Source: Diadema antillarum (taxonomy: Eukaryota). From it: a stretch of 64,000 nt of DNA. The notes beneath the pieces were generated by a model. That model was not told where the DNA came from and did no database searches. It saw only the letters and a program-made list of their open reading frames with translations. The translations under genes were made by a program, and so were the position numbers. The first letter of the stretch is position 1; every line of letters starts with the position of its first letter. The stretch covers positions 930,001 to 994,000 of the forward strand of contig NW_027271313.1 of the NCBI RefSeq assembly GCF_040938485.1, in the 5' to 3' direction. Shown in pieces: positions 2,536-24,300 of the stretch.

Positions 2536-3283
2536 TAAGAGCACACCATCAAATGCGTATGAACAAGGAATAAAGCACTCAAAAGAATGCCGTTGTTATG
2601 TAAACAAAATTGGTGCAGAGTTTCATTATTACGTCACAGATCTTGAAATGAGCTGTACGCGCAGCGCGTTGATGAGGAGAAACGCAAGGTGAACATTGTT
2701 ACGTCACGTCTAGCATCTTGATAGGCATCAACAATTATCTTGACGTTGTCCTTGTGGGTCACTACAGAGGTTGAAATTTAGAATACCCCACGTTCCACAT
2801 TTCTTCACTTTTATACCAAACCTGTACTTTGAAAGATTCTCATACAACAGTAATCAATAGCTCAAAGCGATAATGATAATGAAAAAAAAAGTATATTCCA
2901 CCAATGAGCCGATATCCCGTCGAACAGTTTTGCATGGGGCGATAACTTCATCAAGATATGGGCATTATCAATCGAAGGGCTCGACATCAAATATTACAAC
3001 CGTTCAGCAATTAATGAATCAAAATGATCCTCACACCGTGTAAATGTGGGTAATGAATGATTGAAGTGCCGACATATTTGTAAGTCCACTAAAAGTTTCA
3101 GACGTTGATTTACTATTAGGCCTATAATGTATTATGTATTTTACATGCATTAGTGTGTATTTGTGATTGTATATATCTGTGGCTATACTAGTTCGGCGTT
3201 TTTGACTATATCGATCAACAATGTAATTTGCAAAGTCCTTATCAAGGTTGTTACCTCCAATGAGCAAGAGACACCGGGCTCAG

Positions 3284-3311
<28 letters not shown>

Positions 3312-3314
<3 letters not shown>

Positions 3315-3486
3315 GGGCGGATCTAGGAATTCCGTAAAGAGGGGATGCGTTTACAAAATCAAAGGGAGGGGGGCGCACGCACCCCTCCATCCATTTATTT
3401 CTTTTTATTTCTTTTGTTTCAACAAAAACAAATGGGGGGGGGGGGGGGGCGTGCGCCGGTTGCGGTCCTCCCTGGATCCGCCACTG
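3312..3486 (+). mobile_element. Solo MITE of the array family (hAT-like termini) inserted in (CA)n
   Basis: Termini TAGGGGCGGATCTAGG and CCTGGATCCGCCACTG; CA repeats on both sides. Confidence 0.75.
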
Positions 3487-4222
3487 CACACACACCGTGA
3501 CATACATACACACATACACGCGTACACGCACAGACTTTTTTACGAGTCAATGAAAATTTACCAACTTAGAAAGGAACGTAACAAAATTACCCAAGTACTG
3601 TTAAGAAATACCCAGGCTTAATGTGCAAAATAATGTTGGTAAATTATATAAGGCAAATTTCTACCAAAGTATCAGTTGCCTAATAGAATAAAAATTACCC
3701 AACACGCAAAGGGAATGCGTCACTTACACAACAGCGGGGCAAAAAGTACCCAACTTTCCATTATCAATTCTGTTGGTAAATATTCGCCCAATATCTAAGT
3801 AAGAATAATTGCCCATTGCTGTTTTAATCACCTAAAAGCTCAATTGGGCGATAATTGCCCAAAATGATGGTCTTTTTTTTTTTACCAACCAACAATTACC
3901 CAACTAAATTTACCCAATATTTTAAGAGTGTATCCTTATTCACATTATTTTGTGTCAGAAAATGATTCTTATGAAGATTTGTAAGGCCATTGGGAGACTT
4001 GTGAGCCCTTGTTATGATATCGTCATTTAATTAACATCCCTCGTGTTGTCTAGTATCGCTGTTTCAACATCACTGTTTTAATGAAGCTCTGAAAGTATCA
4101 AAGATCTGAAAATTCTAAAAACCGAATTGCAATGTGGAATTGCAGTTACGAAAGAAAAATTATTTATACCTAAAGGTCTGGATGAGACAGTAATCTTGTG
4201 CGCTTTGTGCTTGCGAAGAGGA

Positions 4223-4677: not shown

Positions 4678-4833
4678 NNNNNNNNNNNNNNNNNNNNNNN
4701 NNNNNNNNNNNNNNNNNNNNNNNNNNNNNNNNNNNNNNNNNNNNNNNNNNNNNNNNNNNNNNNNNNNNNNNNNNNNNNNNNNNNNNNNNNNNNNNNNNNN
4801 NNNNNNNNNNNNNNNNNNNNNNNNNNNNNNNNN
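4678..4833. other. Assembly gap
   Basis: Run of N. Confidence 1.
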
Positions 4834-5272: not shown

Positions 5273-8013
5273 TGTGTTTGTGTGTGTGCGTGTGCGTTTG
5301 TGTGTGTGTGTGTGTGTTAACACTCGTATATTAAGACACATAAGGTATACAAAATGTATACAATGAGTCTTTCACACTCCGATTCAGAGATTGAAGAGAT
5401 CAGTTTGAAAAGGTAAAAATGAACAAAGAGAGAAAGTATGTGAAGTTGTTGCAACAGTGCTGGCTCGTTCGATTATGCACCTGTGACAAAGTGATTTGGA
5501 AATAGAAATTTTAATGAGCTTGAAAAAAAAATATGAAGGGAAAAAATTTCAAACAGAGAGACATAAAGTGTGAGGGAGATTAAAAAGAAAGAGACACAGA
5601 CAGAAACAAAAAAAAAAGGTAAAATGAGAATATCGGAGAAAGCTCAAATTTGGAGATACAGTGTTAAATTATTTACCAGCACCCAATAGGCTTGCCAAGT
5701 TTGGATTCCATAATATCCGTGTGAAAAACATCTGGGACGAGGACAAAAACAACAAGAGACATAGTGGTAACAAACCTACTTCCTGTATTTTCTCTGACAT
5801 GGTTTTGATTTGTAATTTCTCCGTCAAGTGCTGAGGTCAATCCAGGGACTCTGGACTCGAGAACTTTGCAGGACTGTTTAGAGAAAACCCCTACTGTTCC
5901 ATTAAACTCACCTCGGAAACTTGGTGCCCAGATGTGTTATGATGATAATTAGTCAGGAGCAGCGGTAAGCTTCCGTGTAGGCATATTAATTCTATATTCA
6001 ATTCAATTTAAAGTTGTTGCTTTTGATGCTGGGGGCGCATCTCTAGAAGTACAAAAAGTTGTGACGAGTTTCCTCATAACATAAATGAATATTACATCCC
6101 ATGATATGCAGTGTCACAGTTAAAGAGGAAATCCAGCCCAAATATAAGTTAGTCTGATAAAAAAGAGTAAAAATCTTACGAGTTCAACTATAAAAATACG
6201 ACTAAATAAGAAGGAAAAAAAGGAAGTTATGACATTTTGAGTTATGCTAATTTCTGCACAAGAGTTCTTGTACAATGGATATGAATATGCATATGAGGGA
6301 CCTAACCATGTCATACCCTCATAATTTTCCACTGATTGTGTACAAAATAAAAATGACGAAAATTCAATGTATCTGTCATTTAAGTCTGAAACATGACATT
6401 ATTCCTGGATGAATAACTTCAGAATAGTGATCAGTTAGATATACGAGGATTTGAGCCTCTGGAATAATTCGTTTGAATGAAAAAACGGGAAATTTCGAAA
6501 TGTATCTACAAACTATATCCATGGTTAGTTGTGAGGGAATGGCATGCTCACTTTGTCATTGCATATTCGTATTGACTGTTCAAGAACTGTTTTCCCCCAA
6601 AATAGCGAAACTTCAAGATGTCATAATTTCCTTATTTTTGAAACGCCTTTCGATCAATTTTATTCCGCTGAACTCGTAATATTTTACTCTTTCTTATCAG
6701 ACTAACTTATATTCGGATTGGATTTCCCCTTTAATATATAGAAATACAAATCCGAGGTAAGGACAAGAAAAAAGACGGAGACAGAGACCTAAACAACAGC
6801 AGAATCAAAGACAAGGAAATACGGACACTGACATTGACAGGGACATCAAGTTCGACTTAGTATATAACAACAATCATAGGGACATGGGACCCAACAGACG
6901 TGTAATACAGGGGGATTGTCGAGGGTAGAAAATAGAAAATCAGGCACAGCCCTCAAACAGTAAAGCGATACATGCAGCTGTCATGACAGCAAATAAAAAA
7001 AAAAAGGCGTACATTCACGTCGCCATACGCTTTGTCGTACAAAAAAAGGTATCATGGAACTAAACAACATTACGAAATAAGAGAGAAAAACAGAAGAACG
7101 ACAAACTTTGATGGCATGATTCCGACAGTAATATTGTATACAATGGTGTTGGGATCACAAAGACCAATCAACTCTTGACAGCGAGCCTGGCCCTGGGAGG
7201 GGACCTTCCAACAGACATCCTGAAGTACGTTGGGAGAGAGTTAAATACATTCGTTGGAAGCACGAAAGCAAAAAAAAAAAGAAAAAAAAAAGACATCAAA
7301 ATGAAGCAATTCAAGCCCGAGTTATCCCCGAGTCCGAGTCTAGCCTGACCCCGTTCGGGTAAGTTCTGAGACTGAACGTTTTTGGTTAATATTTCCCATT
7401 TTCGTCGTTACCCATCGAATATCTTGTTATTACAGCGTTATTCTGCACATTTCCTAGGCATACGTTCACATTTTGGAGCAAAATTTGACAACTTTTGCAG
7501 GCGTACCAGAACATTGTTTGGGGTTTAAAACATTACCCAATCCAACCCAACCCAATCCAATTAAGCATAGTTCAGGCTTCTCGGAGACACACGTTGATTC
7601 GAGTCGACTAATATTATCTTAATTGATTTTTATGCCCTACTATATTTTGAAGTAGATGTCAAGCACTAATTACATTTAACGAGATTTGAAGGTTTTTGCT
7701 AACTTTCTCACACTCACTGTTATCTTGCTTTTATTTCACTAATTTCATTCACAGCTTCTTCCGTTTTTTCTTTTTTTGGAAAGTAACTGTGATCACAGAA
7801 ACAGTGCTGAAAGTGAAATGGAAGATTAAACGAGAACTTACCGTTTGAAGTTTAATATTAATTTTATGAGTAATTGGAGGGTGAGATTACGTCATATATG
7901 AGATCCCGCTAGTGCGCGCGCCACTCAATATTAGAAGCAAGAATGTGACCACTGACGTAGGAAGATAACGAGAGATTAAGTTACCGTTTGAAATTTGGGG
8001 GAGGGTGAGGTGG

Positions 8014-8123
8014 GACGTAATCTCACCCTCCAATTACTCATAAAATTAATATTAAACTTCAAACGGTAAGTTCTCGTTTAATCTTCCATTTTATATCGTA
8101 ATTTCGTGAGAGATTACGTCATA
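8014..8123 (-). repeat. DIRS-A internal complementary region (ICR)
   Basis: Perfect complement of the 3' terminus and of the 5' terminus, joined through CCATTT (the circle-junction sequence). Confidence 0.95.
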
Positions 8124-8310: not shown

Positions 8311-9288
8311 CTATTTTTTGATAATTGTTTCTACAAAGGTTTTCTCAGCAGGACAGGGCTTGTTGTAGTACTTGCGAAAGGTTCTTTCGTTGGCCCAACC
8401 GGCTTGCACAAGTATTTTAGATACTGGGAAATTTCCCTTATTGGCTGCGGAGGTAGACGCTGCCCGAGTAGAGTGCGCCTTGTAGATCTCTGTATCAATA
8501 CCCGCAGCCTCCAAAACCTCCTTAATCCAGCGAGCGATTGTTTGAGATGATACCCTGTGATACGGTTTCTTGTAGCTAACAAAAAGGTACCGTTCACTAG
8601 CTCTGATTCTGCGGGTCCTGCTGATGTATTCCTGCAAGTACCTGACTACACAAAGTCTCCTGTCTGGCGGGTATGCCTGGAGCTTGACACTGTGTGAGTA
8701 ATTTCCAGGCTTGCTCTGTTTTAGGAGATCATGAAGGTGAAAGGTGACTGCATTATCTCTTAACACCATACCATCCAAGCTTAGATAGTGTAATGATTGA
8801 ATCCTTTGTGCTGAGATTAATGCAATAATCACACACAATTTAAGCGTCAATTTTTTCAGGTCCAAAATGTGCGCTGGGGACCAAGAACGAAGAAAATTGA
8901 AAACAAGGTTAACGTCCCACATTTCCATGTATCTAGGCTTGGGTGGGCGTAGCTGAAAGACTCCCTTCATAAACCTCTGGATAAAGGGATGGTTTCCAAC
9001 TGTAAACATAGTATCTCGAAGAATCACAAATGAAGATAGAGCACTCCGTGCTAAGTTTATGACACTGTAACCTGCCCCTTTATCGAAGAAAATGTCACTC
9101 AGGAATTCCAGGATAGCTTGAACATCCGAGTACAAGTAGTTGCTGCATTTTTTGTCACAAAATGCTTTCCATTTGTTTATGTACACTGCATACTGTTTTT
9201 TAGTCCCTTTTCTCCAAGAGGAGGCCATTACAGCAGTTATACGTGCATTCAATCCCGCATCTCTGAAGGGCTTGCACAGAACCTGCAA
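8311..9288 (-). CDS. DIRS-A ORF3, tyrosine recombinase (YR)
   Basis: Catalytic pattern AQRIQSL (R), KQSKPG (K), HSTRAAS (HxxR), AGW, FRKYY (Y). No ATG at the 5' end (TGA-TCT-TCT-TGC-TTG-CAG-GTT). Confidence 0.95.
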   Translation of the reverse strand: MQVLCKPFRDAGLNARITAVMASSWRKGTKKQYAVYINKWKAFCDKKCSNYLYSDVQAILEFLSDIFFDKGAGYSVINLARSALSSFVILRDTMFTVGNHPFIQRFMKGVFQLRPPKPRYMEMWDVNLVFNFLRSWSPAHILDLKKLTLKLCVIIALISAQRIQSLHYLSLDGMVLRDNAVTFHLHDLLKQSKPGNYSHSVKLQAYPPDRRLCVVRYLQEYISRTRRIRASERYLFVSYKKPYHRVSSQTIARWIKEVLEAAGIDTEIYKAHSTRAASTSAANKGNFPVSKILVQAGWANERTFRKYYNKPCPAEKTFVETIIKK

Positions 9289-11383
9289 GCAAGAAGATCA
9301 ATCTGAGTGTTTAGTGGGTGAGGAGTGTTAGAAACTGGCAATGTTAGTAAGGATTCACTCCTATGAATAACAAGTGGTTCCTCATTCATCATCCTGTTTA
9401 GGAGAGGAAACCATGGCTGGCTTGGCCATTTTGGGACTACTAGTATCCCAGTTGCATTATCAGATTTGATTTTTTGAATGCACTTAGCAACTAAGCAGAA
9501 AGGAGGAAATGCGTAAAAGTACCACTTTCCCCAATCGAGAGTAAAGGCATCAACAGCCTTGGCATGTGGGTCGGGCAACCATGTGACATAGTTCTCTACC
9601 TGCTTGTTAAGTCTGGAGGCAAATAGGTCTATTTCTGGTGTCCCAAAACGTGAAGTTATTTCTTGGAAAACTGTGCGGTCAAGCATCCATTCTGTGCGGT
9701 CATTGAAAATTCTAGACATGCGGTCTGCCTCCACATTCAGCTTTCCTGGCAAGTGTGCTGCAGTGACCCAAATTTTACGAGTTTCGCACCGCTGCCAAAT
9801 CTCTCGGGCTGCCCGATCACAGTCAAGGGATTTAATGCCTCCCATGTTGTTAATGTACGCAACAGCAGTACTGTTATCTAGCCGTAACAAAACATGAATG
9901 TTTTGTGAATTAGAACAGAAGGACTTGAGTCCCATGCCAGCAGCCAGGGTCTCCAGATAATTAATCTTATTCTCCCTGGCTTTTTGCAGCTCGTCTTCAT
10001 TCCATCTACCCCCTGTATGGGTGGTATGATCAGATGCCCCCCAGCCTTTGCCACTGGCATCCGTGCACAATTCGAGCATAGGTTTAGGGTGTCGTAAGGG
10101 TGAGAAAGTAGACTGCACATTGTCTGTCCACCATTGCAGCTCTTGTTTTGCTTCCAAAGATAGGCTCATTTTTCTGTCAAAATGCCCCTTATTCATTTTG
10201 AGTGCTTTGATTTTGTCCCTTTCTAAAGCCCTGTAATAGAGCTGTCCATACTGGACTGCGGGAAATGATGCTACCATTTTCCCGATAATTCTAGCCACCT
10301 GCCTGATACTGGGGTTTGCCATTTGCATAAGTTCATTGCACAAGGACTGTATTTCCTCTGATTTGTTATCAGGCAGTCGAATTGTCATGGCCTGAGTATT
10401 GAGAATGAAACCAAGAAATTGTATTTCTTGAGTGGGGCATAGTACTGATTTTTCTGGGTGTACCAAGAACCCAAGTTGTGCAAGGATGCTAGTGGTTTCA
10501 AAAACCGTTTGCAATGTTTGATTCTCACTTTCTCCAATAATGAGTACATCGTCAAGGTATCCAATTACTACATGCCCTTGCTCTCTCAGTAATGTAAATA
10601 CAGGTTTCAGTAGTTTAGTGAATAACCTTGGCGCCGTGCTCAGGCCATTAGGCAGTACTTTGAATTGCCAAAGTTGATTTTTCCAGGAGAACTTTAAGAA
10701 CTTCCTGTGTGTTGGGTGCACAGGTACTGTATAGTACGCGTCCCGAAGGTCGACTGAAGCTAAGAAGCTATTTTCTGAAATGAGTTCAATAGCAGTATGG
10801 ATATTTTCCATCTTAAAATGCTGGTACTGGAGATATTTGTTGAGATCAGACAGGTCTAGGAAACGCGTGTACCCCCGTCTTTTTTAGGCCGTGTAAAAAT
10901 ATTAGACACGAATTCTCCAGTTTCCATCTGGCACGGTTCGATTACTCCCTTGTCATGGAGTTTAGAAATTTCAAGATCAATATCAGCCTCTTCGGCTTTA
11001 TTACACCGAAAAAGGTAAGGGGGTTTAGTTCTAGATGGTGCACCCATCTCTTTACTGAATTCAAGCCTGTAGCCACTTACAGCATTTAGCACATGTGGGT
11101 CTGAAGTAATTTTGCGCCACTTTGGGAGGAATTGCTTCAGTCGACCTCCTACCATAGGTTCTACATTATTATGACATAGCTTTGCATAATCACTAGAATC
11201 AGATGTCATGTTTACCTCGTCAGTTGAACTGGAGGTTATCGTGCTCTCTTCATCCCTGAGCCCTGCTTGCTGCCGCAGTGCGGTTGGTGCTGGCTGGGAT
11301 ATGTGAAGGTGTGGGGAGCCGACGGCTTCCCCCTCCCCTTGGGGCGCTGGCCTAAAAAAGCATGGCTGGTAGCTCCAGTCCAC
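9249..11383 (-). pseudogene. DIRS-A ORF2, reverse transcriptase-RNase H-DNA adenine methyltransferase, split by a 1-nt deletion near 10861
   Basis: Track ORFs 10856-11383 and 9249-10811 join as ...RPKKDGGTRV[I]LDLSDLNKYLQYQHFKMEN if one base is restored. Motifs: YLDD; RNase H TDASG/NYLE/DNSTAV/ADRMSR; MT DLFAS and YAFPPF. Confidence 0.9.
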
Positions 11384-12684
11384 GGTCCTTTTGCACCTGT
11401 AGGCCTAGTGACATCACTTGTACTTGCACGAGAAGTAGTCCAGCCCGCGTCGCGGTACTGTTGGGGCAAATTTGAGCTTCCTGATGTAATCTTGCTCCTG
11501 CCCTTGCCATATGCACTCCTGCCATAGTCATATGGGCTGAAACGCTGCTTTTTGAATTGTCTGCTATGCTCACTCCTGAGGACACCCTCAGTTGCTTTTT
11601 GTTCATCTCTTATGTCTTTCATTTGCCTTCCCAGGTCGTCACCAAAAAGGAATTTGGAGACCGGGGTAGAGGGCTTGCAGAGATGCTGGAATTGATAACC
11701 AATGTCTGGTTTCATGAATTCCTTACGCAAGGAATTTAGCTCGAAATTCGCACTGCACAGAAGTGCTAGTGCATCTTGTTGCTGTTCAGTGATATCCTGT
11801 GCCGACACTGTATGTATGTAGGCATTGATGCCTCTCGTGAGATTCTTTTGGAGTCTCTGAAATTTGAGGTCTCGTGTCTTTGAAAAGGCAGGTAGCCCAT
11901 TCCAGATTCTTTGGTTGACTTTCGGCACATCCACCAGCTCACAGTTGCTGGGAATGGGGTATTTAGTGATCGTTTCATCTACCACTTTGGGCTCGAGCTG
12001 GTGGGTCAGAAGGTAGGCTGTAGACTTAGCAATTTCTGGGTCAATGGGGGGACCAACTTCCTCAGCCACAGCAAATTTGGCTGCAATGTTTGGCACTTTC
12101 TCCACTACAGAAGGGGGAACTTCGCCTTCTTCAATATCAAATTTGTCATCACGACTATCCCCTTGACCTGGTTGGATAATCACAGAGTTTTCATCCATAT
12201 CTCGGCCCAGAAATGGTGCCGCATATTCATCATCATAATGGCAGTCAGTATCTGCCGAGTCTGAAGGGGAGTATTCAGAACGAGTCCTGATACTCTTTCC
12301 ATTGCCACCGCCTTCACGGGCTGGTGTCTGCTTTGCCGACTGTGCCTCCACAAATTGAACAACCACAGCTAATTGGCCTTCAAGCTTGCCGAGTCTATCT
12401 TCCAAAGTTGAAACTTTAGAGGCCAGTTTGGCAGGTGGTTTCACTGTTTTGTTTGCACCGGTACTACCGCTAGGGTTAGCACTGCTTGTTGTAGTAGTAC
12501 TATTACTAGTACCTGCCTTGCCGGCTCTAGTAGGCGTTTTACCTTTGGCTGTCGCAGTTTTCTGCTTGCACTCTTGTGCGTGCTGGTCTCCGCGACCCCC
12601 GCCGGTGGCTGCCGGGGACGCGACTGCTGTCAGCAGCGGTGGTGCGGCTGCGCCGCCCACGTTTGGAACGTTGGTCGAAGACAT
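11236..12684 (-). CDS. DIRS-A ORF1, Gag-like protein (482 aa)
   Basis: Long ORF at the ORF1 position. Short coiled coil (STLEDRLGKLEGQL), then a block alignable to DIRS-B ORF1 (VPKVN..IW, RD.K.QR.Q, DALALLC.AN.E.N.LRKE..KPD, LFGDDLG). Confidence 0.92.
   Translation of the reverse strand: MSSTNVPNVGGAAAPPLLTAVASPAATGGGRGDQHAQECKQKTATAKGKTPTRAGKAGTSNSTTTTSSANPSGSTGANKTVKPPAKLASKVSTLEDRLGKLEGQLAVVVQFVEAQSAKQTPAREGGGNGKSIRTRSEYSPSDSADTDCHYDDEYAAPFLGRDMDENSVIIQPGQGDSRDDKFDIEEGEVPPSVVEKVPNIAAKFAVAEEVGPPIDPEIAKSTAYLLTHQLEPKVVDETITKYPIPSNCELVDVPKVNQRIWNGLPAFSKTRDLKFQRLQKNLTRGINAYIHTVSAQDITEQQQDALALLCSANFELNSLRKEFMKPDIGYQFQHLCKPSTPVSKFLFGDDLGRQMKDIRDEQKATEGVLRSEHSRQFKKQRFSPYDYGRSAYGKGRSKITSGSSNLPQQYRDAGWTTSRASTSDVTRPTGAKGPWTGATSHAFLGQRPKGRGKPSAPHTFTYPSQHQPHCGSKQGSGMKRAR
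11313..11359 (-). promoter_or_regulatory. Predicted -1 ribosomal frameshift signal (T TTT TTA plus downstream stem), DIRS-A
   Basis: Heptamer 11359-11353 is phased to the gag frame, and the -1 frame is ORF2. Stem GGGGAG/CTCCCC with a 14-nt loop. Confidence 0.75.
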
Positions 12685-14518
12685 AAATTCCGTTGCTGTT
12701 CAGCTGAAGAATGATCGTTAAAACCAGAAAAAACCTGGCAAAACCTCCCGTAGAGGTAACTTTCGCTATTACGTCGATCCAACTCGAACGAAAACTTGAA
12801 TATTCAAGTGCAATTCCGGCGAATTTTCCGAGCACAGAAATTCGCGTGTTAGCAAGATGGCGGCGACTAACGAATTGAGTGGCGCGCGCACTAGCGGGAT
12901 CTCATATATGACGTAATCTCTCACGAAATTACGATATAAAATGGTTTATTAATTTCGTACCAAAATTTACGTGACGAAGGAGGGTTGCAGATGGATGCGC
13001 ATGAACATTCTCCATACATGTCATCAAATTAAGGCCTGCGGGCGAGGATAACAACTGTCAATACGTTAACATGGGGGACAACAAACCACGTGAATATAAA
13101 ATAGTAACAAAGTTTAAAGATCGGATGACAATCACCTTCAGTTTCACCCATAAAGTTATCACTTCAGCTGTATGAATCAAAGACTGTAGAACAGGACCTA
13201 TGATAACTGCTTTCATTTGTGATCATTACTGTTTGCAATAAACTCCACTATAATGGAAAGTCTCTCAGATCATAATATGCATCTGTCTGTGTGTGAAGTT
13301 CTTTCATTCCGCCATTTTGTGGTAGGTTGTAGTCTTTGAGGTTAAAAGATAGAGAGAGATCGGTGAATGCCCGAAGGCATGTTTGTAGTTATCAATGACT
13401 CCACAACTATGATGGAGTAATGATTATTGTTTAAGGCAACAGCGAGAGAGAAGTATATACATTGATGGAGGAAATGCATCAAATTCTGGAGAGATGCTGA
13501 AGTCTAAAATGAAATGATATTTGGATTGTTATTATTATATTACACAAACTTACAAAGTTGATGACACCGGCTGTACCGGGTTGGTGTAAAACCGTAACGA
13601 CTCAAAATATTATCAAACCAACAAAACATCTCACCTGTGGTGGCACAAAATAATTTGCTTTGCCAGCCGCTTCGGAGTCGGGTCCAAAATCGCCCATCAC
13701 GAACGTGGTAAATCCAGGCATTGCTAAGAGCACACCATCAGATACGTATGAGCAAGGACCTTTAGGATTTTGGTATGAACAGCACAGGAGAAATCACTAG
13801 GCATAAACCACTTAGTGGGGTGGCTTAGTGAAATTATCGTGACACGGCGGACAAAAGCATGATTTTTTCACCAAAGGTACTTCATGATGTACCTTCTCAA
13901 AAAATAGGGTGCTCCAAGAAAATTGATGCTGGGAAGGAGGTCAGAGGTCAAAGGTCAATGACCTTTATTTGTGAAATAGGTTTTTTGGCTATTTCTCAGG
14001 TCAGGAATATCCAATCTGGATAAAACTTGGCAGGAAGAATATTGAGAACAAGTAAAATATTTTGATTGAATTTGGAGTGAATTTTCCAAAGGTCAAAGGT
14101 CAAAGGTCAATGAACTTTTTCTAAAAATCACGTTTTTGTTTATTTCTCCAGGTAGGAAGATTCAATTTTCACAAAATTTGATATGAACGTTGTATAGAAG
14201 GTACCAAGAGTATAAACCAGGGGTTAAATATAATTGTTGATTTGTACGTTGCCATGGCAACCCAAAACTAGGGCTTTTGATTGAAGTTAGTTACAGGAGG
14301 CTATTTTCCAGTTTGGAAGAGATTCTATTTGAATAGGTACAACTGATCGACGGGATGTATAGAGGTTTGAAATACTTTTCATTAGTGTTAAGTGGTATGT
14401 TGCTATGGCAACTACATATATAGATTTTGGCTAAACTTAAAGGAGACTTCAGAACTTATGAATTTGAAGAGATTTCCATCAGGGTTGGTATAATTGATCA
14501 ACAAAAAAGTCGCCAGAC

Positions 14519-15078
14519 AAAGATTTGTCACCTTTATAGCATGTGGGTTGAGTGAATGCACCAACAATAGTAGAACACATCAGTGAGAGTTTGAGGAAAA
14601 TTGGACAATCCGTTCTAAAGTTATGAATTTTTGAAGTTTCTGCTCATGCAGTCGAGGCTGGATGAGAAGACTACTATACCTTGTAATGTCACATGTGTAC
14701 AACGATATAAAGAATGAATAAAGAAAATTCAACATAAATTATTTTCGCTTACAAAAGGATACTCGACTTCTCTTTCAGAAGGCAGGGGGAATTATATTAC
14801 CCTTGACATACGTCAGTAGCAAGTCAAAGAAACTATGTGAACTTTATTCAAAAAGTATGGTTTTGTGAAATTCTCATTTTATTTTCCTTAGAATGTGCGC
14901 ATGTGACATCATACACTGTGGTAGTCTTTTCATCAAGCCGCGACTGTGCAGATACCTTAAAAAATCATAACTTTTGAACGGATTGTACGATTTTTTCCAA
15001 GCTTTCTGTGATGTGTCCTACTAATATTGTTGTATTCACTGAATCCACGTGTGCATGAAGGTGGACTTGTCCTTTAAG
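14519..15078. mobile_element. Kolobok-like MITE nested in the 13.8-17.5 kb element
   Basis: Degenerate ~115-bp TIRs; right end ...GGACTTGTCCT-TTAA; left end eroded. Confidence 0.55.
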
Positions 15079-15761
15079 GACAGATTCCGAAAGAGCAGAC
15101 TGTAAGCTTTAAAATGATGTATAAAACAATTCAAAGGGATTCCCCTAACCTATCTAAATAATAATACCGGTACTGGAAAGAAAGCACACACTCTGGATAA
15201 GTATGAACTGAGAAAAGAGGCTGCATTGTCTATTTTAGCGTTTGATCTTTACCAAGCTGTCTCATGTCATTATGTTCATCTTTTCTTCCCCCCTCCAATT
15301 TTCATTTGAATTTGTCATTATTAATTTTTGATGATAAGAACGATGCCACAAGGCATTGTTTCTTAAAAATGCTTCAACTGCTCCTTCAGGTCCAAAATCT
15401 ACGTCCAATATATATAATTTTCCTGATCTCCTCAACATTTTCCAAAAATAAAGCATACATCTTTTATGCATTGAGTCCTCCTTTTTGTGGATAATTAAAG
15501 GTAAAAACCCAAAATTAGTGCTTGAAAATTATTCTTAGGTGTGAGTTACGGATAGAAAGAACCTCTGTAAAAAAAAATGAATCTGTATAATCAATGTTAA
15601 GTATTGTTAATAACACAAAATGTGAACAATATTTCTATGATAACATGTTTCCAGACTAAACCGTCTGCATTTATGCTTTAATGAGAAAAATACTGATATC
15701 TCTTTATATGTTTGCTTTGATTGCAAAAACTGTATATGGTAGGATGTCTTGTGATACAACA

Positions 15762-15901
15762 GGGGGGGCATTTCATGAAGCAGTTTGGTCAGATATTTTT
15801 CTGACAAACTGTTACAAACTACAGAAATCCTTGCATCTGATTGGCAGAGAGCAAATTTGTCCGACAACTTGTCGGACAAAATGCTTCATGAAATGCCCCA
15901 G
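15762..15901. mobile_element. Harbinger-like MITE (nested)
   Basis: GGGGCATTTCATGAAGCA / TGCTTCATGAAATGCCCC with CAG flanks; related copy at 47712-47864. Confidence 0.7.
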
Positions 15902-17519
15902 ACCTACACATATTATGCATAAAATGTGATATCCTGAACATTTTTTTCAAGTCACTCTCCCAGATGTGTATATATAGGACCTTTAAGTTTTTCTTGTGTT
16001 TGTTCCTGGCAGATTACTAGTACACAAATGCTCCAATCCATGATGACCTAACGGACATTAAGGAAATTAAAATGAATATACTGAAAACCAAAACTACAGA
16101 TACTAATAACTTACTTCATTCTTCTCTCCCCACCCCACCCCTTCTTTTTAGTTTCTTGATATACTAGTAGATCTAGCTGCCTTTGATAATTGTCATTATG
16201 TAACATCATCTTCAATTGACAAGGCGATAAAACTTAACAATCATATTTTCATTATGCTGCTGGACTAATGGGGTTAGTTGAACTATATTGTTTTTAATGT
16301 ACTATACTTTTTCCTCCTATCAATCACATGTATTTTGGGTGGAATGTATTTTGACATAAAGCATCATAGAATCAACCGCCTTTGGGGTCGGGAATTTTGT
16401 CATATTATATTGTGATTTAGATTCTGCTCTATGCCGATTTTGTTTTACTTCTATCAACTTTTTAAACTTCCCCATAGACTTTGTTCACCAGCCAACTACA
16501 TCCCACCCTCTTTGGATAATGTGAACCAATCAAACATTGCTTTTACTTTTTAATAACATGTCTATACATAGCTATTAGACCAAAAATATTCAAACCGTTT
16601 TAAGTCTTTATGAGTGAAATTACAAATATCAATATATTTTTAAAAAAATTCAAATTGTCTAAATTCAACTTCATCTATGAAAACAGACTTTTAACCTTTT
16701 TAAACATTTGAATAACCCCATAAGAAATAAGAAACATATAGAGAGGGGAAGTGCGGACTATAAAAATTGCTTACGGGAACCAGGTAATCCCTGCGCTAAA
16801 CCTATGGAATTCACACAATCTTGGAGGAAACGGGTTAAATTTGTAAGGAAATATGTAGGGCAATACCCAAAACCTTAAGTTCTCAATGGAATATGCAGCT
16901 CTTCTACTGGTAAACTAGTAGTTCTGGGAGAAAAAATGAGCTGTGACATAGTCCTACACCTGGCTCAGTCATTGCCCAAGATTTAAAGTATCTGAGCCAG
17001 AGTCACATGTCACTCTTTGCCATTTCTCTACAGGAGGTAGAGAGTACTAAAAAAAATCCTTTACCAGAAATTATATCAAATTATTTAATGAAAAGGTGCT
17101 TAAGAAAACTGGACTATTCCAACACACCTCCCTCAGGTCTGCAACACAGACTAACCACCTGTTACCATAGGAAAACCAGTAAAAATGGTGTATTACTGTA
17201 AACATGCACATAATATGTCGTATTATGGGTCTGAATTTTAAGACTAGCAACCATGTACATTGCATTGCATTGTACAGAAACCTGGCGAATGCCCCGTGTA
17301 TAGTCTTTGAATTCAGACATTATTGTTATGTACAAATTAAGGGCATTTTCTCATTTTTTCTGTTAGCGGATTTCTTGGAGCACCCCCTAATTTTGATCCT
17401 CATATATACACAAATGTCTGAGGAAAAAATGACACTTTTGTCCGGCGTGTCACGATTATCAGTATATTTGTCACTAAGCCACCCCACTAACTTGAAAAAG
17501 CACCGTTGTTATGTAAACA

Positions 17520-17720
17520 AAAATGTAACAAAGTTTCATTATTACGTCACAGATACTGAAAAGGGCTGTACGCGCACTGGGTTGATGAAGACAAATGCAA
17601 CGCCGATATTATTATTACGTCACTGCGCACACTAGGATGAAGTTCGCGTCATTACGCGCATGTGCACAGAGTGACGCCCTGATATGCGCGTTGATCAGGC
17701 AACGTGACCATGGTTACGTG
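17520..17720. promoter_or_regulatory. CpG-rich promoter-like segment with repeated TTACGTCA (CRE/ATF-like) motifs upstream of the kinase gene
   Basis: ATTATTACGTCAC occurs twice, plus CGCG-rich tracts; homologous segments at ~2600-2720 and ~32510-32620. Function is inferred. Confidence 0.4.
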
Positions 17721-18129
17721 TGTACGTACACGTTCGTACATAACAATTCAACAGTGTACAATCTCTGTGCTTCTTTTTATCGAAAGTGTGTTATCACGAA
17801 AACTCCCGAAGTTTTCCCACTTTTGCGACTTGAGAGACAGTAAATCGTATTTTGTCAGGTCAGTATTGATTATCTACAATCTTTTACATGAGTATTCCTA
17901 ATTTTGCTCATAAATTTCAACGGATTTAAGGATTTACAACTACTTAAAAAATACTTTGTACCGTACTGGCATTCCTCAAGGTCAAGTGAAGGTCATTTAT
18001 TCAACCAGAAGGTCTATACACAATCAATAGGGGGACACTTCATACAGTACCAATAGGCCTTATCATTATCATTCAAATCTTCAATCTTTCTTATATGCAG
18101 ATATTGAGATCTAGTCTGACTCCTACGCC

Positions 18130-18350
18130 ATGGAGGTGTATTCCAAATCCCCAATTCACGTCCCCGTGCCATGGGAGTTACAGAAGAGGTCACGGTGTTA
18201 CGATCCGTACCCTTGGGTCCGCGTCCGGGCCACCGCAGGGTTACCCGCGAACAGCTCGCCTGATGTAAGCAAAAACTATACTCCCCACATTCTCTTATTC
18301 TATGTCGCATGTTCCAAATAAGCAGAAAAACGTATATACGATAAAGTAAG

Positions 18351-18388
<38 letters not shown>

Positions 18389-21300
18389 ACAATTAATTGT
18401 ATTATTATGTATGCACATTAATTAGAGTCATATTCACTGAAAATATACGAAAAAGTGTTTGATACAATAAAAGTGACGATTGGATAAGATTATAAGACCT
18501 ATTGTGAACAATGTTACTACAGATAGTGGGTTTACTGTACATGAGCTGTCGTACAGCTGCCCTACTGAGGTTGTGAAGAAGCATCATTATATTCCTACAC
18601 AGCAGTGTTTCCAGTCTGTAGCGTCATATCAGATTTCCCTTAAAAAGCAGCATCCTGATTCACTTTGAGAACTATTTTTAAAGACGTAGTTTTAAGTTTT
18701 GTTGGTGATGGAAAATGAATGAATGAAGACTAAGTGTTATGCAGCCACAGTAAATGGTGGAAATAGATGCAAAGTGAGATTTTTGCATTACTAAGGTCAG
18801 ATTATTGAATGATAACTTAGTACCGATCCGAGGTACAGGTTTATTGCATTTTACAATCTCTTCATTTCTCATTGTGTGCCAAGCTGGTTGAGACAGCCCG
18901 CCGAATTCCATCACAACCAGTGTACCTGGCTGGTAATCTTCTTCTCCAACGGCTGAAAGAGTCCCTTCAAAACAAGGAGCTGAAGGAACAGATTGGTGTA
19001 CGTAATGCCCCATTTCTTTGATAATCAATTAAGATCCACATGAACACAGGCGTAAGACCCGAGAATACGGTGAACTTACAGTTGTCATACATATCTTTGG
19101 AAGACGATGAAAAAAACATAGAGAAGCCCCCACCCCCACAGACACAAACAAAAAAGATATAAATAAAAAGAAAAGATATTTTATTTCGTGAGTTTACGCA
19201 AGAACTCACAGTGAGAGCCCGCTCAACGCGCGCGCAGTCATATCGCTTCTTCGCACGTTTTGCACGAGGGGCTAAGTTCCCTCATCGCAGTCTAAATCCA
19301 GTTTTATTCGTCCTTTTAACTGTGCATCTTCGCAATATCTTATCATATTGTGGATTGTTATTATTTATAGCTCAGTTAGAGCTGACTTTGCTTCGGAAGT
19401 GGATTTTTATTCACGAGATATCGCGGGATGGAAATTCCGCTTTCCGCTCCCCCACAGCATACAGCTAAGCCTGTCGTGGGTGGCACCACTAGTACGAGCG
19501 CCCTGCATACAGCTAAGTCTGTCGTGGCGATGGTGACTACAGCCGTGCATCATGAACCCAAGTGTTCGCCGGCTAGTAAGGCTCCAACAAAGAAAGAAGG
19601 GAATGGGAAAACCCTTAAAAAACCCACCAAACCGGGCCTAAGTAAGAAGGCAGCTCCCCCTAAAGAGAAGACGGACGCGGAGGTGCTTTCCCGCCTTTCT
19701 AAACTCGAATCCATGTTTGAAAAGGTCATGGAAATACTGCCGTCTCAGCCTACTCGTATCCAACAACAGCAACTACGTGCCGGCCATGTTGGCACGGCTT
19801 GTACCGCAGAAAACCACGGTGGTGTGCCGTTTGGGGGCATGGATGTGTGTGCTACAGACGATAGTACGCAAGCACGCGGTACGCTGCACGACGACCACGG
19901 CGGCAGCAGCTACAGTGGGGATGAATGCGATTTCCCTGCGGCGGCAGCGGGTTACGCACCCGCAGAGCTCACGGGGCGGCCAGTACAAGTGCCATCCTTT
20001 GCTGCAAAATTTGCGGTCTCCGCCTGTGTGGGCGACCCTATCAATGACGAATTGGCAAATTCTACGAATTATCTCATCTCCCATTGTCTGGAGGAAAAAT
20101 CTATGGAAGAGTCAGCGGCAAACTACCCAGCACCGAGCAATTGCCCCAACTTACTAGTCCCTAAAGTCAATCCAGTGATTTGGGATAATGTGACACAGAC
20201 TACGCGCAGCAGAGACGTTAAGCTGCAGAGAGTACAGACATCTCTTACCCGCGGGCTGTGTGCGTTCCTACAAACTCTTCCTACTGACTTGAACGAGGCG
20301 CAACAGGACGCACTCGCTTTACTCTGTAATGCCAATTACGAGATGAATTGCCTGAGAAAGGAGCTGATCAAGCCCGATATGAACGCTGCTTACGCACATC
20401 TGTGCAAGCCTACTACGCCCGTGACCGCGTTTCTATTCGGTGATGACTTGGGACAACGTGTAAAAGATCTCAAGGAGGAGAATAGGGCTGCCTTTAGTGT
20501 GGTTAAAGGCCAGGCTAAGAGATCTACTCATCAGCCGTACCACCCATACAAGCGCACGGCCAGCGGTGGATTCAGCCGGAAGCAATATCGGAACGCAGGC
20601 TGGCTCGCAGCTGGCGATACATCCAGGCCTTTTTTAGGCCAGCAGCAGCGGGGATACAGACATTCAGCCCCGCACACGCAGACTCGCCCACCTCCAGCTC
20701 ATGCGCACAACCGGGGGCAGAGCTACTCGACAGCAACCCCAGCCAAGCCAAACACTGTGTCACGGAGAAAGTAACTGCACTACCCAAGGAGGTAAGTTGC
20801 AGGCCTAGCTCTTGTTGTGGAAATACACAATCTACTCACACTGTACAGTCAGTTTTTGACATTGAACATGTAGATGTTCCATTAGACCTGCCCGTTGGGG
20901 GTCGATTGAGGCATTTTAGCAAACAGTGGAATCATATTACCACTGATCCTTTCATACTTGATGCAATTAGCGGTTACAAACTTGAATTTCAAGAGGCGTA
21001 TAGCCCACCTCACAGAGGTAAACCGCCTTACCACTACAGAGTGGGTAATGCTGAGGAGAGCAAGATTGACATTGAAATTCGAAAACTGGCCGAGAAAGGC
21101 GTAATCGAAGAATGCCAGCATGTGGCTGGAGAATTTGTGTCCAATATCTTTACACGCCCAAAGAAAAATGGGGACATACGCCTAATTTTAGATTTATCGG
21201 ACCTCAATGACAGTCTGAATGTACAGCATTTCAAAATGGATAACATCCATACGGCTACAACCCTAATTTCCCCTGGTTGTTACCTTGCCTCAATCGACCT

Positions 21301-24300
21301 TCGAGATGCCTACTACTCTGTCCCTGTTCACCCCTCATATCGCAAGTATTTGAGATTTGTCTGGCATGAGAAATGTTGGCAATTTAAGGTACTCCCCAAT
21401 GGCCTTAGTACAGCGCCTAGGCTCTTCACAAAGCTTATGAAGCCGCTGTTCGCAAAGCTGCGACAGGCAGGCCACCTGGTTGTGGGGTATTTAGATGACA
21501 CTCTCATAATCGGTGAAACTGAATCACAAGCACTAGAAGCGGTGCAAGCAACCACAAAACTGCTCTCTGACCTTGGTTTTGTCATTCATTCAGAGAAATC
21601 TATCCTAGAGCCTCAGCAACGGCTCCAATTTTTGGGGTTTATCTTGGATTCGGAAAGCATGACTATAACGCTCCCGCATGAGAAATGTCAAAATATCAGG
21701 GCAGTATGTGCGGAATTGCTAGGGAAACAAAACCCTACTATCAGGCAGGTGGCGCAGGTCATTGGGAAACTGATTGCTACTTTCCCTGCTATTCAATATG
21801 GCCCCCTCTTCTATCGTAACCTAGAAAGAGACAAAATTCTTGCACTAAAATCAAGCAAAGGGCATTTTGATCGACCTATGAATTTGTCTGAAGCTTCTAA
21901 ACAGGAGTTAATGTGGTGGTTCAATAACATTCACTGCCAGTCGGCACCAATTAGTCGAGATCGGCCAGCTTTAGAGCTACGTACTGACGCCAGTGGGCAA
22001 GGATGGGGTGCCACTGATTTAAGCAGTGAAACTGGCGGTAGATGGGATGATCAGGAGATAGTGCATGCTCTAAACAATGAAATCAACTATCTTGAAATCT
22101 TAGCTGCAGGGCTTGGTTTGAAGTCATTTTGCGGCCACCTGCATGATACACATGTGCTCATTAGAACTGACAACACAACAGCTGTAGCCTACCTGAACAA
22201 TATGGGAGGCATTAAATCTCGAGCCTGCGACAGGGCAGCACGAGACATTTGGGTTTGGTGTAAGGAAAGGAATATCTGGATCACAGCAGCCTATTTACCA
22301 GGTCGTGACAATACAGAAGCAGACAGGAGATCTCGTCATTTTAATGACAGAACAGAATGGATGCTGAATAAGAAAGTTTTTACTGATATCACTAAGAAAT
22401 GTGGTACTCCCCAAATTGATCTTTTCGCGTCCAGACTCAATAAGCAGCTGCCTGCGTACGTTACGTGGCTGCCTGACCCAGATGCGGTTTCTGTGGATGC
22501 ATTCACTCTGAATTGGGGTGATCTGTATTTCTACGCATTCCCTCCTTTCTGCCTCATCCCCAAATGTCTCCAAAAAATAGAAAACGACAAGGCACATGGT
22601 CTCTTGATTGTCCCAAACTGGCCTACGCAAGCGTGGTTTCCTCGCATGAGGAGAATGCTTAAAGATGAACCACTCTTAATTCCTAGACACAGGAATTTGA
22701 TTACGCAACCAGTATCTGGGGAACCGCACCCTTTACACGCTTGCCTTGATCTGTTATGTTGCAGGTTTTGAAGCTGCCGTTCGAGAACTCTGGCATGAGC
22801 AGCAGAACGGTGGACATCTTGGCAGCATCTTGGAGGGCATCAACCCAAAGACAATATTGTACATATATAAGGAAATGGAGAAAGTTTTGTACACTTAAGA
22901 AGGAAAGTCACCTTCATGCCAAGATTAATTTTGTTTTGGAGTTTTTTACACACATGTTTTATGAAGAGAACTTGAGCTATTCAGCTATTAACTCAGCACG
23001 GAGTGCACTTGCTACCTTTCTAGTGTTAGAGGATGAACAATTTACTGTCAGCACTCATCCGCTTCTCTCTCGTTTTATGAGAGGTGTGTTCCAGCTCAGG
23101 CCCCCAAGGCCGCGGTATTCGGAAATTTGGGACGTGAATATTGTTTTTAGATATTTGAGAAGTCTAGCTCCCGCTAACTCGCTTAGCTTGAAGCAATTAA
23201 CGATGAAGCTGTGCATGTTACTGGCCTTGATATCCACCCAGAGGGTACAGACTTTGCATTGCCTGAATCTAGACAGCATGATTCTCAAACAATCTATGGT
23301 GTCATTCAAAGTTAATGAACATCTTAAGCAGTCTAGACCTGGGAATTTTGGATTGGACGTACTTTTGAAAGCGTACCCCCCAGACAGACGTTTGTGTGTA
23401 GTTACATACATTAAGGCCTACCTTCGGAGAACCAAAGAGATCCGAGGAGAGGAAAGTCATCTCTTCATTAGTTTTCGCAAGCCTTTCAAGAGAGTAACGG
23501 CACAGACAATTTCTCGATGGATCAAAGAAATCATGACTGGCGCTGGCATTGACACCACAATGTTCAGTGCACATTCAACCCGAGCAGCATCTAGCTCAGC
23601 AGCAAACAGGGCGGATGCACCTATTCCTCTGATCCTCGCAAAAGCAGGCTGGTCAAAAGAACGAACATTCCGTAAATTCTACGACAAACCTCTACAAGAA
23701 GAGGGACAGTGCCTGTCACAACTCATTGTGAGGGAATAATGACCTCAGACCAAGGTAATTTGAGCTTACATTTTGCTTGCCATTGTGCATGCTTGAGTTT
23801 GTTCAGTTGGAACAAATGTGACTTCTGTGCTACAAAATCTCACTGTGAGTTCTTGCGTAAACTCACGAAATAAAATAGAAAGATTAAACGAGAACTTACC
23901 TGTTTGAAGTTTGATCTTTATTTTATGAGGGAGTTGGAGAAAGAATTCACAGTCCCTCCTCTCCCTTCCCATGGCATGAATACTATTACAAAATGTATAG
24001 ATCAACTTCAAGTAAGTTCTCAATCTTTCCACTCTGACAGAAGTCACATCTTGTTGCTACGAAGTATGACTGCGCGCGCGTTGAGCGGGCTCTCACTGTG
24101 AATTCTTTCTCCAACTCCCTCATAAAATAAAGATCAAACTTCAAACAGGTAAGTTCTCGTTTAATCTTTCTATTATCCATGATCTTAGTGAAGACGAGAC
24201 ACTATTCTACCATCGTGTAATGAAGCGTCAACCGGCCATTGACTCCACAAGTGTTTATGACTTCAACAAAATGACCTGATGGAATTGAATGTTCATTCTT

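What the first reader, a model, noticed from the sequence alone, without database searches (positions are those of the whole stretch)
9283..22764. One-promoter, three-protein expression scheme shared by two divergent DIRS retrotransposons (Gag, Gag-Pol by -1 frameshift, Gag-recombinase by frameshift plus splicing)
Seen in both elements, at homologous positions: a slippery heptamer leading from gag into ORF2, a phase-0 donor in the ORF2 frame, and a phase-0 acceptor at the first conserved YR residue. Inference: unspliced RNA gives Gag and Gag-RT/RH/MT (~1,110 aa in DIRS-B). Spliced RNA lacking RT gives Gag and Gag-YR (~780 aa), which would package the recombinase through Gag. This would explain how ATG-poor ORF2 and ORF3 are translated. 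I do not recall this scheme being described for DIRS1 elements, but I could not check the literature.
Basis: partly seen in the sequence, partly recalled or inferred. Interest (0 to 1): 0.9.

Follow-up and report, generated by a model that had tools for sequence, protein, structure and literature searches.

The report
Frameshift-plus-splicing expression in DIRS1 retrotransposons
Two sea-urchin DIRS1 retrotransposons, and relatives in other sea urchins, an abalone and marine metagenomes, share a conserved ribosomal-frameshift site and an intron that removes the reverse-transcriptase gene, so one RNA could make Gag, Gag-Pol and a Gag-recombinase fusion; I found no published description of this answer to how these elements express genes that lack start codons.

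Summary
All three signals are at the stated coordinates in both elements. They are a T_TTT_TTA heptamer in the gag frame, a GAG|GTAA donor 17-20 nt after the gag stop in ORF2 phase 0, and a TTGCAG|GTT acceptor in ORF3 phase 0.

The signals recur at homologous positions in six further echinoderm-type DIRS1 families, while their flanks diverge. A canonical heptamer lies in the gag phase in 17 of 18 families. ORF2/ORF3 overlaps have a heptamer in only 4 of 19 elements, none of them in the echinoderm clade.

Independent NCBI gene models use exactly this intron, which removes the RT gene. They come from Diadema antillarum (99% identical to element B), Strongylocentrotus purpuratus and, at analogous sites, Haliotis rubra.

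ORF2 and often ORF3 lack start codons, and conserved recombinase residues lie upstream of the first Met. Both proteins must therefore be read from upstream.

No junction read, cDNA or peptide could be retrieved, so splicing and the Gag-recombinase fusion remain inferences. No paper in the searchable library describes the scheme.

It is a new variant of known retroelement strategies, and it is directly testable.

The parts
19177..19242 (+). Element B, left inverted terminal repeat
   Evidence: It is complementary to 23838-23877 and to 24065-24117.
19428..20774 (+). Element B, gag (ORF1, 448 aa)
   Evidence: ORF list. It is homologous to gag-only NCBI models in Diadema, Lytechinus and Strongylocentrotus.
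20630..20636 (+). Element B, slippery heptamer T_TTT_TTA in the gag frame, within the conserved context GGCC-TTTTTTA-GGCCAGC
   Evidence: The heptamer and context are identical in 6 of 6 echinoderm-type families.
20648..20673 (+). Element B, predicted GC hairpin (GCGGGG, 14-nt loop, CCCCGC) starting 12 nt after the heptamer; a possible frameshift stimulator
   Evidence: Similar G-run/C-run hairpins occur 8-17 nt downstream of the heptamer in most families, but folding z-scores are not significant.
20519..22771 (+). Element B, ORF2 frame (-1 relative to gag) encoding RT, RNase H and methyltransferase. It is open from 20519, and its first ATG lies far inside the RT domain.
   Evidence: (RVT_1; a Dam-like hit in A).
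20789..20797 (+). Element B, splice donor GAG|GTAAGT. The exon ends at 20791, in ORF2 phase 0, 17 nt after the gag stop.
   Evidence: The homologous donor is used by XP_071502116.1 and by P0290.
20792..22764 (+). Element B, predicted intron (1973 nt) containing nearly all of ORF2
   Evidence: The homologous intron in the Diadema antillarum gene model is L018 4077-6052.
22745..22767 (+). Element B, splice acceptor: pyrimidine-rich tract followed by TTGCAG|GTT. Exon 2 starts at 22765, in ORF3 phase 0. The ORF3 frame opens at 22750, and an ATG at 22756 would be spliced out.
22765..23739 (+). Element B, tyrosine recombinase exon (ORF3)
   Evidence: Pfam Phage_integrase and SAM-like domains. It is 99% identical to the C-terminal 327 aa of XP_071502116.1.
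23838..23953 (+). Element B, internal complementary region
24065..24174 (+). Element B, right inverted terminal repeat
12874..12952 (-). Element A, left terminal repeat (in element orientation)
11236..12684 (-). Element A, gag (482 aa)
11353..11359 (-). Element A, slippery heptamer T_TTT_TTA in the gag frame
   Evidence: The intact A-family relative L066 has the same heptamer.
11208..11218 (-). Element A, splice donor GAG|GTAAAC. The exon ends at 11216, in ORF2 phase 0, 20 nt after the gag stop.
   Evidence: L066 has GAG|GTAAAT at the same place.
9283..11215 (-). Element A, predicted intron. It holds ORF2, which is broken by a frame change near 10860-10900.
8311..9282 (-). Element A, tyrosine recombinase exon after the acceptor GCTTGCAG|GTT. 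There is no ATG until codon 21 of the conserved region.
8014..8123 (-). Element A, internal complementary region
7816..7929 (-). Element A, right terminal repeat

Best explanation
Both loci are DIRS1-like retrotransposons of a diadematid sea urchin. The proposed mechanism has three products.

1. On the full-length RNA, most ribosomes stop at the gag terminator and make Gag.
2. A minority slip -1 on U_UUU_UUA and continue into ORF2, which has no start codon. This gives an uncleaved Gag-RT/RH/MT fusion, because the elements encode no protease.
3. A fraction of the RNA is spliced from a donor 17-20 nt beyond the gag stop, at an ORF2 codon boundary, to an acceptor at the first conserved recombinase codon, at an ORF3 codon boundary. 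This removes ORF2. On the spliced RNA the same frameshift yields Gag, a linker of about 52 aa, and the tyrosine recombinase.

The presence, phase and conservation of the signals are shown here, as is the use of this junction by independent gene models. Actual splicing, actual frameshifting, the fusion protein and its delivery through Gag are inferred.

Frameshift:
- ORF2 is in the -1 frame in almost all families.
- A canonical heptamer lies in the gag phase in 17 of 18 families. The other two phases have 4 and 0.
- The heptamer is TTTTTTA in 13 of the 18.
- In L001 and L020 the ORF2 frame opens only 1-2 codons before the heptamer.
- Synonymous positions of F-L-G-Q are invariant in the echinoderm clade.

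Intron:
- GAG|GTA(A/G)G and TGTTGCAG|GTT are conserved in 6-7 of 7 families with unconserved flanks.
- The donor is the top-scoring GT of the element in B, L001, L014 and L020.
- NCBI models XP_071502116.1 and P0290 (D. antillarum), XP_030847864.1 isoform X1 and XP_011683648.1 (S. purpuratus) use exactly this junction. XP_046546323.1 (Haliotis rubra) uses an analogous donor and acceptor.

Reading across the junction:
- Donor and acceptor are both at phase 0.
- ORF3 has no ATG before the conserved domain in A, L066, L020, the L024 family, L034, L039, L054 and Haliotis.
- Residues upstream of the first Met are conserved between A and L066, mostly through synonymous change.
- In the clade where gag and pol share one frame (L035, L037, L038), a phase-0 donor and a phase-0 acceptor again join in frame.
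- In the L065 family, which shows no donor after gag, the recombinase frame stays open for 1020 codons from inside gag through all of pol. This implies translation from upstream.

Negative control:
- ORF2/ORF3 overlaps lack slippery heptamers in 15 of 19 elements.
Against: - No spliced read, cDNA contig or processed genomic copy was found. All Logan and ENA contigs retrieved are unspliced.
- The gene models are automatic. Each also carries a different, weak upstream intron that merely switches frame, so part of each model is clearly computational. I could not see whether RNA-seq supports them.
- B, L001 and L023 keep an ATG 9 nt upstream of the acceptor, and many distant families have a Met at the homologous point. 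That is compatible with independent initiation.
- TGTTGCAGG also encodes the conserved Cys-Cys-Arg end of ORF2, so coding constraint explains part of the acceptor's conservation.
- A's donor (GTAAAC) is weak.
- In distant families the acceptor choice is ambiguous, and a phase-blind test was only marginal: the top acceptor is in phase 0 in 9 of 16 families (P = 0.05), and the top donor in 11 of 16 (P = 0.004).
- Downstream hairpins are not better than shuffles, and their spacing of 8-17 nt is longer than the usual 5-9 nt.
Confidence: 0.58

Rival explanations
1. The frameshift and the intron are real, but the spliced RNA does not make a Gag-recombinase fusion. Either it serves mainly as a Gag-only messenger, as in Ty1/copia elements, or the recombinase is made alone by reinitiation or non-AUG initiation just after the gag stop.
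For: The gag stop lies only 17-20 nt before the junction. In L001, L012 and L014 an ATG is the second codon after the junction (V/I-M-R-Q). NCBI isoforms of 326 aa start at that Met. Splicing that yields gag-only RNA is established for Ty1/copia and BARE (PMC5580714, PMC3735527).
Against: The Met after the junction is not conserved: B has its first Met at +10, A at +20, and L020 has none within 40 codons. Independent initiation would not need phase-0 donor and acceptor sites, nor an in-frame join in the clade where gag and pol share one frame. Reinitiation after a 450-codon ORF is normally inefficient (general knowledge).
Confidence: 0.17
2. The intron is not used in vivo. The GT and AG motifs are kept by overlapping coding constraints, the gene models are ab initio artefacts, and the recombinase is made from unspliced RNA by termination-reinitiation at the ORF2 stop or by some non-canonical recoding.
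For: All retrieved contigs are unspliced. The acceptor overlaps the conserved ORF2 C-terminus Cys-Cys-Arg and ORF3 Leu-Gln-Val. In B and L001 an ATG lies 13-40 nt before the ORF2 stop. The models' first introns are evidently artificial.
Against: The donor sits in a linker whose protein sequence is otherwise unconserved, yet GAG|GTA(A/G)G is kept. The ATG is replaced by TGC, CTG or TTG in A, L066, L020, L012 and L014. No slippery site is conserved in ORF2/ORF3 overlaps. Gene models from three species and two phyla converge on the same kind of intron, while their frame-fixing introns differ.
Confidence: 0.15
3. The frame change at the T6 run is made by RNA polymerase slippage, that is, insertion or deletion of one U in the transcript, and not by the ribosome.
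For: The site is a homopolymer run (T6A; A6C in L034 and L065). In L065 both alternative frames are open around A_AAA_AAC. Polymerase slippage could serve both frames.
Against: Other families use GGGTTTT or CCCTTTT. These fit tandem tRNA slippage but are poor polymerase-slippage runs. Runs of 6 are short for RNA polymerase II slippage (general knowledge). The heptamer is always in the X_XXY_YYZ phase of gag: 17 of 18 families, against 4 and 0 in the other phases.
Confidence: 0.05

Closest known systems
Gag-Pol -1 programmed ribosomal frameshifting of retroviruses and LTR retrotransposons (HIV-1 uses U_UUU_UUA; own knowledge)
   Same: The heptamer is identical and lies in the gag frame. Pol is in the -1 frame and has no start codon. 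A GC-rich hairpin is predicted downstream.
   Different: The element is a DIRS1 tyrosine-recombinase retrotransposon without a protease, so the fusion would stay uncleaved. The hairpin spacing is longer than usual and the structure is not statistically supported. No paper in the searchable library links DIRS1 to frameshifting.
Spliced subgenomic gag RNA of Ty1/copia elements (Drosophila copia, Arabidopsis Copia, barley BARE; PMC5580714, PMC3735527)
   Same: An intron removes the pol region from a share of the transcripts and so adjusts protein ratios from one transcription unit.
   Different: In those elements splicing only truncates the product to Gag. Here the downstream exon is a second enzyme, the recombinase, placed in frame with the frameshifted reading frame. 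Splicing therefore swaps Pol for recombinase behind one shared frameshift site.
Retroviral env mRNA and foamy-virus pol mRNA (spliced subgenomic messengers for downstream genes; own knowledge)
   Same: A downstream gene is brought forward by removing upstream coding sequence.
   Different: In those viruses the donor lies in the 5' leader and the downstream gene uses its own AUG. Here the donor lies after gag, the downstream ORF often has no AUG, and the phases imply a fusion.
The 'long ORF overlap' of Dictyostelium DIRS-1 and about half of described DIRS1-like elements (PMC3266345)
   Same: The element order, gene set and the -1/-1 arrangement of frames are the same. In L065 the recombinase frame is open through all of pol.
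   Different: The window's elements have an overlap of only 19-46 nt. In families with a partial overlap, the open recombinase frame begins at a candidate acceptor in the YAFPPF-coding stretch. This suggests that the overlap length reflects where the acceptor lies. I did not find that link in the literature.

Membership tests
DIRS1-like retrotransposons (order DIRS) | A tyrosine recombinase in place of a DDE integrase | tested here: met
   Pfam Phage_integrase and SAM-like domains in ORF3 of both A and B.
DIRS1-like retrotransposons (order DIRS) | A pol ORF with RT, RNase H and a methyltransferase domain | tested here: met
   RVT_1 in both elements. The Dam-like hit in A (E = 2e-6, 28.0 bits) falls 0.1 bit short of Pfam's curated cut-off (28.1). 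B aligns over the same region.
DIRS1-like retrotransposons (order DIRS) | Inverted terminal repeats plus an internal complementary region near the 3' end | tested here: met
   B: 19177-19242, 23838-23953 and 24065-24174. A: 12874-12952, 8014-8123 and 7816-7929.
DIRS1-like retrotransposons (order DIRS) | No aspartic protease | tested here: met
   No protease family among the Pfam hits of any ORF at E <= 0.01.
-1 programmed ribosomal frameshift site | An X_XXY_YYZ heptamer in the upstream frame, inside the overlap with an open -1 frame | tested here: met
   Present in 17 of 18 families.
-1 programmed ribosomal frameshift site | A stimulatory stem-loop or pseudoknot 5-9 nt downstream | tested here: inconclusive
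   GC hairpins are predicted 8-17 nt downstream in most families, but z-scores range from -2.8 to +0.45 and no covariation test was possible.
-1 programmed ribosomal frameshift site | Measured frameshifting or a detected transframe peptide | not testable with these tools
   Needs a reporter assay, ribosome profiling or mass spectrometry.
Spliceosomal (GT-AG) intron | Consensus donor, a polypyrimidine tract, and a YAG acceptor | tested here: met
   B has GAG|GTAAGT and a pyrimidine-rich tract followed by TTGCAG|G. Both rank top or near top within the element. A's donor is weaker (GTAAAC).
Spliceosomal (GT-AG) intron | Conservation of the splice sites beyond what coding constraint explains | tested here: met
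   The donor is conserved within an unconserved linker. The acceptor is conserved but is confounded by two overlapping reading frames.
Spliceosomal (GT-AG) intron | Junction seen in RNA | not testable with these tools
   The only evidence is indirect: NCBI Gnomon models use the junction. No spliced contig was found.

The most novel reading that the evidence does not exclude
Across metazoan DIRS1 elements, an intron that removes pol is an ancestral, selected device. It places the start-codon-less tyrosine recombinase behind the same gag frameshift site as pol, so that Gag-Pol and Gag-recombinase are made in set ratios and both are carried into the particle by Gag. On this reading, the long-known variation in the pol/recombinase overlap simply marks where the acceptor lies. 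Lineages without the intron, such as L065 and possibly Dictyostelium DIRS-1, reach the recombinase by keeping its frame open through all of pol.
Probability: 0.4. Interest if true: 0.8.

Novelty: new variant of a known kind. Interest (0 to 1): 0.7.

Why it matters
How DIRS elements express pol and, above all, their recombinase has been left open. The surveys I could read describe overlapping ORFs but give no mechanism (PMC3266345). DIRS elements are abundant in many animals and form centromeres in Dictyostelium.

A conserved frameshift-plus-splice scheme would:
- give a testable model for the stoichiometry and particle delivery of the recombinase;
- explain why ORF2 and ORF3 lack start codons, and why ORF overlap length varies between families;
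- explain how a copy with a broken RT, such as element A, can still supply Gag and recombinase in trans;
- improve annotation, since current automatic models insert artificial introns to imitate the frameshift.

It would also add a new combination, splicing that swaps the C-terminal enzyme behind a shared recoding site, to the known repertoire of retroelement gene expression.

Tried and rejected
- Direct RNA evidence. I looked up exact gag and recombinase proteins for spliced or processed contigs. Every contig was unspliced or not on record. De Bruijn contigs break at alternative junctions, so this absence is weak evidence.
- More Gag-recombinase models. Searches with the fusion models P0140 and P0171 added only one further D. 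antillarum fusion model (P0290). The word-based candidate limit was reached.
- Phase-blind pairing of the best donor with the best acceptor. Only 5 of 13 pairs were compatible, because my acceptor score is crude and the windows in long-overlap families hold many AG sites. I report the per-site phase counts instead.
- Frameshift-stimulating structure. Hairpins recur but are not better than shuffles. The region is too divergent to align for a covariation test.
- A second -1 frameshift from ORF2 into ORF3. Rejected, because no slippery site is conserved there.
- The 870-1030 aa proteins with a C-terminal recombinase, considered as possible processed Gag-recombinase copies. Rejected: in L065 the N-terminal 600 aa is the alternative frame of an intact pol.
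- Literature. Six searches found no description of the scheme. Goodwin and Poulter 2001 is not held.
Full report
**What is there**

The finding spans two DIRS1-like retrotransposons. Element B lies on the + strand at 19177-24174, and element A on the - strand at 12952-7816. Each has:
- a gag ORF;
- an ORF2 with RT, RNase H and a Dam-like methyltransferase;
- a tyrosine-recombinase ORF3;
- inverted terminal repeats plus an internal complementary region.

B is intact. A's ORF2 changes frame near 10860-10900. These are the only DIRS copies in the window.

B's recombinase is 99% identical to the C-terminal part of XP_071502116.1 of Diadema antillarum. The window therefore comes from a diadematid sea urchin.

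**Observation check**

- B: T_TTT_TTA at 20630-20636 in the gag frame; AAGGAG|GTAAGT with exon end 20791, 17 nt after the gag TAA, at an ORF2 codon boundary; TGTTGCAG|GTT with exon start 22765, at an ORF3 codon boundary.
- A: heptamer at 11359-11353; GACGAG|GTAAAC with exon end 11216; GCTTGCAG|GTT with exon start 9282.

ORF2 is the -1 frame of gag and has no ATG before its conserved N-terminus. ORF3 is the -1 frame of ORF2. It opens only 15 nt before the acceptor in both elements.

**Frameshift**

I collected relatives from Logan and ENA contigs, NCBI genomes and one metagenome scan.
- gag to ORF2 is a -1 step in almost all intact elements.
- A canonical X_XXY_YYZ heptamer lies in the gag phase inside the overlap in 17 of 18 families. 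The other two phases have 4 and 0. Shuffles give about 0.11 expected per overlap.
- Thirteen families use TTTTTTA; the rest use AAAAAAC, GGGTTTT or CCCTTTT.
- In L001 and L020 the ORF2 frame opens one or two codons before the heptamer, which pins the shift site.
- In the echinoderm clade the block GCC-TTTTTTA-GGCCAGCG is invariant while its flanks diverge.
- GC hairpins are predicted 8-17 nt downstream, but they are not better than shuffles.

The families are related, so the binomial P value overstates independence. Retention of the site amid diverged flanks is the real argument.

**Intron**

In seven echinoderm-type families the donor GAG|GTA(A/G)G and the acceptor TGTTGCAG|(G/A)TT are conserved, both in phase 0. 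These families are B, A (with its intact relative L066), L001, L014, L012, L020 and L023; their ORF2 is about 50-66% and their recombinase about 53-64% identical to B's. The linker around the donor is otherwise unconserved. The donor is the best GT of the whole element in B, L001, L014 and L020 (rough matrices).

The strongest independent support comes from NCBI gene models.
- XP_030847864.1 (S. purpuratus LOC115926751 isoform X1) reads ...PLPKE|VMRQHF.... On the genome, its exon 1 ends at L011 5120 (AAAGAG|GTAAGT) and exon 2 starts at 7079 (TGTTGCAG|GTT). The 1958-nt intron holds ORF2. Isoform X2 is the unspliced form.
- XP_011683648.1 (S. purpuratus) is a 706-aa Gag-recombinase fusion with the same junction.
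- XP_046546323.1 (Haliotis rubra, a mollusc with 43% recombinase identity) has the same layout: G_GTT... context GGT-TTT-TTA-GGC, then the gag-frame stop, then the donor AACAG|GTGAGC 22 nt later in ORF2 phase 0. Its acceptor TTTTAG| falls at the first codon of the open recombinase frame.

Each fusion model also contains a different, weak upstream intron that merely moves gag into the ORF2 frame. That is the predictor's substitute for a frameshift. It warns that the models are partly computational, and I could not see their RNA-seq support.

**Is the junction read through?**

Several observations indicate translation from upstream, not independent initiation.
- ORF3 has no ATG before its conserved domain in A, L066, L020, the L024 family, L034, L039, L054 and Haliotis.
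- The 20 codons before A's first Met are conserved against L066, mostly through synonymous change.
- Donor and acceptor are both at codon boundaries.
- In the clade where gag and pol share one frame (L035, L037, L038), a phase-0 donor and a phase-0 acceptor again join in frame, with no frameshift needed.
- In the L065 family, which shows no donor after gag, the recombinase frame is open for 1020 codons, from inside gag through all of pol.
- In partial-overlap families the open recombinase frame starts at or within 30 nt of a candidate acceptor in the pyrimidine-rich YAFPPF-coding stretch.
- The alternative route, a -1 shift from ORF2 into ORF3, lacks slippery sites in 15 of 19 overlaps, and none is positionally conserved.

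**Weaknesses**

- No junction read, spliced contig or processed copy was found.
- B, L001 and L023 keep an ATG 9 nt upstream of the acceptor, and many distant families have a Met at that point.
- The acceptor overlaps the conserved Cys-Cys-Arg end of ORF2.
- A's donor is weak.
- Phase-blind tests in distant families are modest: the top donor is in phase 0 in 11 of 16 families (P = 0.004) and the top acceptor in 9 of 16 (P = 0.05).

**Comparison with known systems**

- The frameshift is the classical retroviral type, with the HIV-1 heptamer (own knowledge).
- Splicing that removes pol is known for Ty1/copia and BARE, but there it yields only Gag (PMC5580714, PMC3735527).
- Retroviral env and foamy-virus pol messengers use a leader donor and the downstream gene's own AUG (own knowledge).

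What is different here is that splicing would exchange the C-terminal enzyme behind one shared recoding site.

DIRS surveys describe the ORF overlaps without giving a mechanism (PMC3266345). Work on Dictyostelium DIRS-1 mentions only an engineered intron (PMC7192593). Searches for DIRS together with frameshifting, slippery, splicing or splice donor returned nothing relevant. Older subscription papers could not be read.

**Verdict**

My estimates:
- the frameshift is very likely real (about 0.85);
- the intron is likely real (about 0.7);
- the Gag-recombinase fusion is the best reading (about 0.55-0.6).

It is a new variant of known retroelement strategies, of clear interest to transposon biology, and directly testable with existing RNA-seq data.

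Noticed in passing
L065:1481-4540 (Logan ERR10921500); also proteins P0225, P0246, P0279, P0281, P0285: In this DIRS1 family the recombinase frame is open for 1020 codons, starting inside gag and overlapping the whole intact pol ORF (1635-3740). Two A_AAA_AAC heptamers lie in the gag frame (1611, 1662), and no splice donor follows gag. Six different 50%-identity clusters show proteins of this length (870-1031 aa with a C-terminal recombinase); only L065 was inspected at the DNA level.
   Followed up: partly
L035:1679-1692 and L037:1561-1574 (metagenome contigs): In a clade where gag and pol are in one frame, the conserved TTTTTTA run is followed directly by GGTAAGT, giving a perfect donor TTTTTTAG|GTAAGT in phase 1. 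I have no explanation for it.
   Followed up: partly
L023:1720-1734, L035:1898-1911, L037:1783-1796: Tandem donors 4 nt apart (G|GTAG|GTRAGT) follow the gag region. Using one or the other would change the reading frame by one base.
   Followed up: no
window 9283-11215 (-): Element A's break in ORF2 lies inside the predicted intron. Its gag, linker and recombinase are all open, so the spliced RNA could still encode Gag and Gag-recombinase from a copy that has no working RT.
   Followed up: partly
L011:3565-8401: The S. purpuratus copy that carries the annotated spliced isoform sits in sense orientation inside an intron of a host FtsJ/Spb1-type methyltransferase gene. Reads across its junction could therefore come from the host pre-mRNA.
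   Followed up: no
window 18351-18387 and 24303-24556: ATT/TAA-type microsatellite arrays lie near both sides of element B, about 790 nt upstream of its left end and about 130 nt downstream of its right end.
   Followed up: no
window 4678-4833 and 54227-54365: Two runs of N. I left them as they are.
   Followed up: no
window 20772-20791, 11238-11216; L001:1561-1583; L014:1606-1628: The gag stop lies only 17-20 nt upstream of the exon junction. This is within the distance generally held not to trigger nonsense-mediated decay (own knowledge), so the spliced RNA's normal Gag termination would be tolerated.
   Followed up: no
window 24836-25603 (+) and 59814-60428 (-): These are the only other ORFs over 180 aa in the window. 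Neither has a significant Pfam match.
   Followed up: yes
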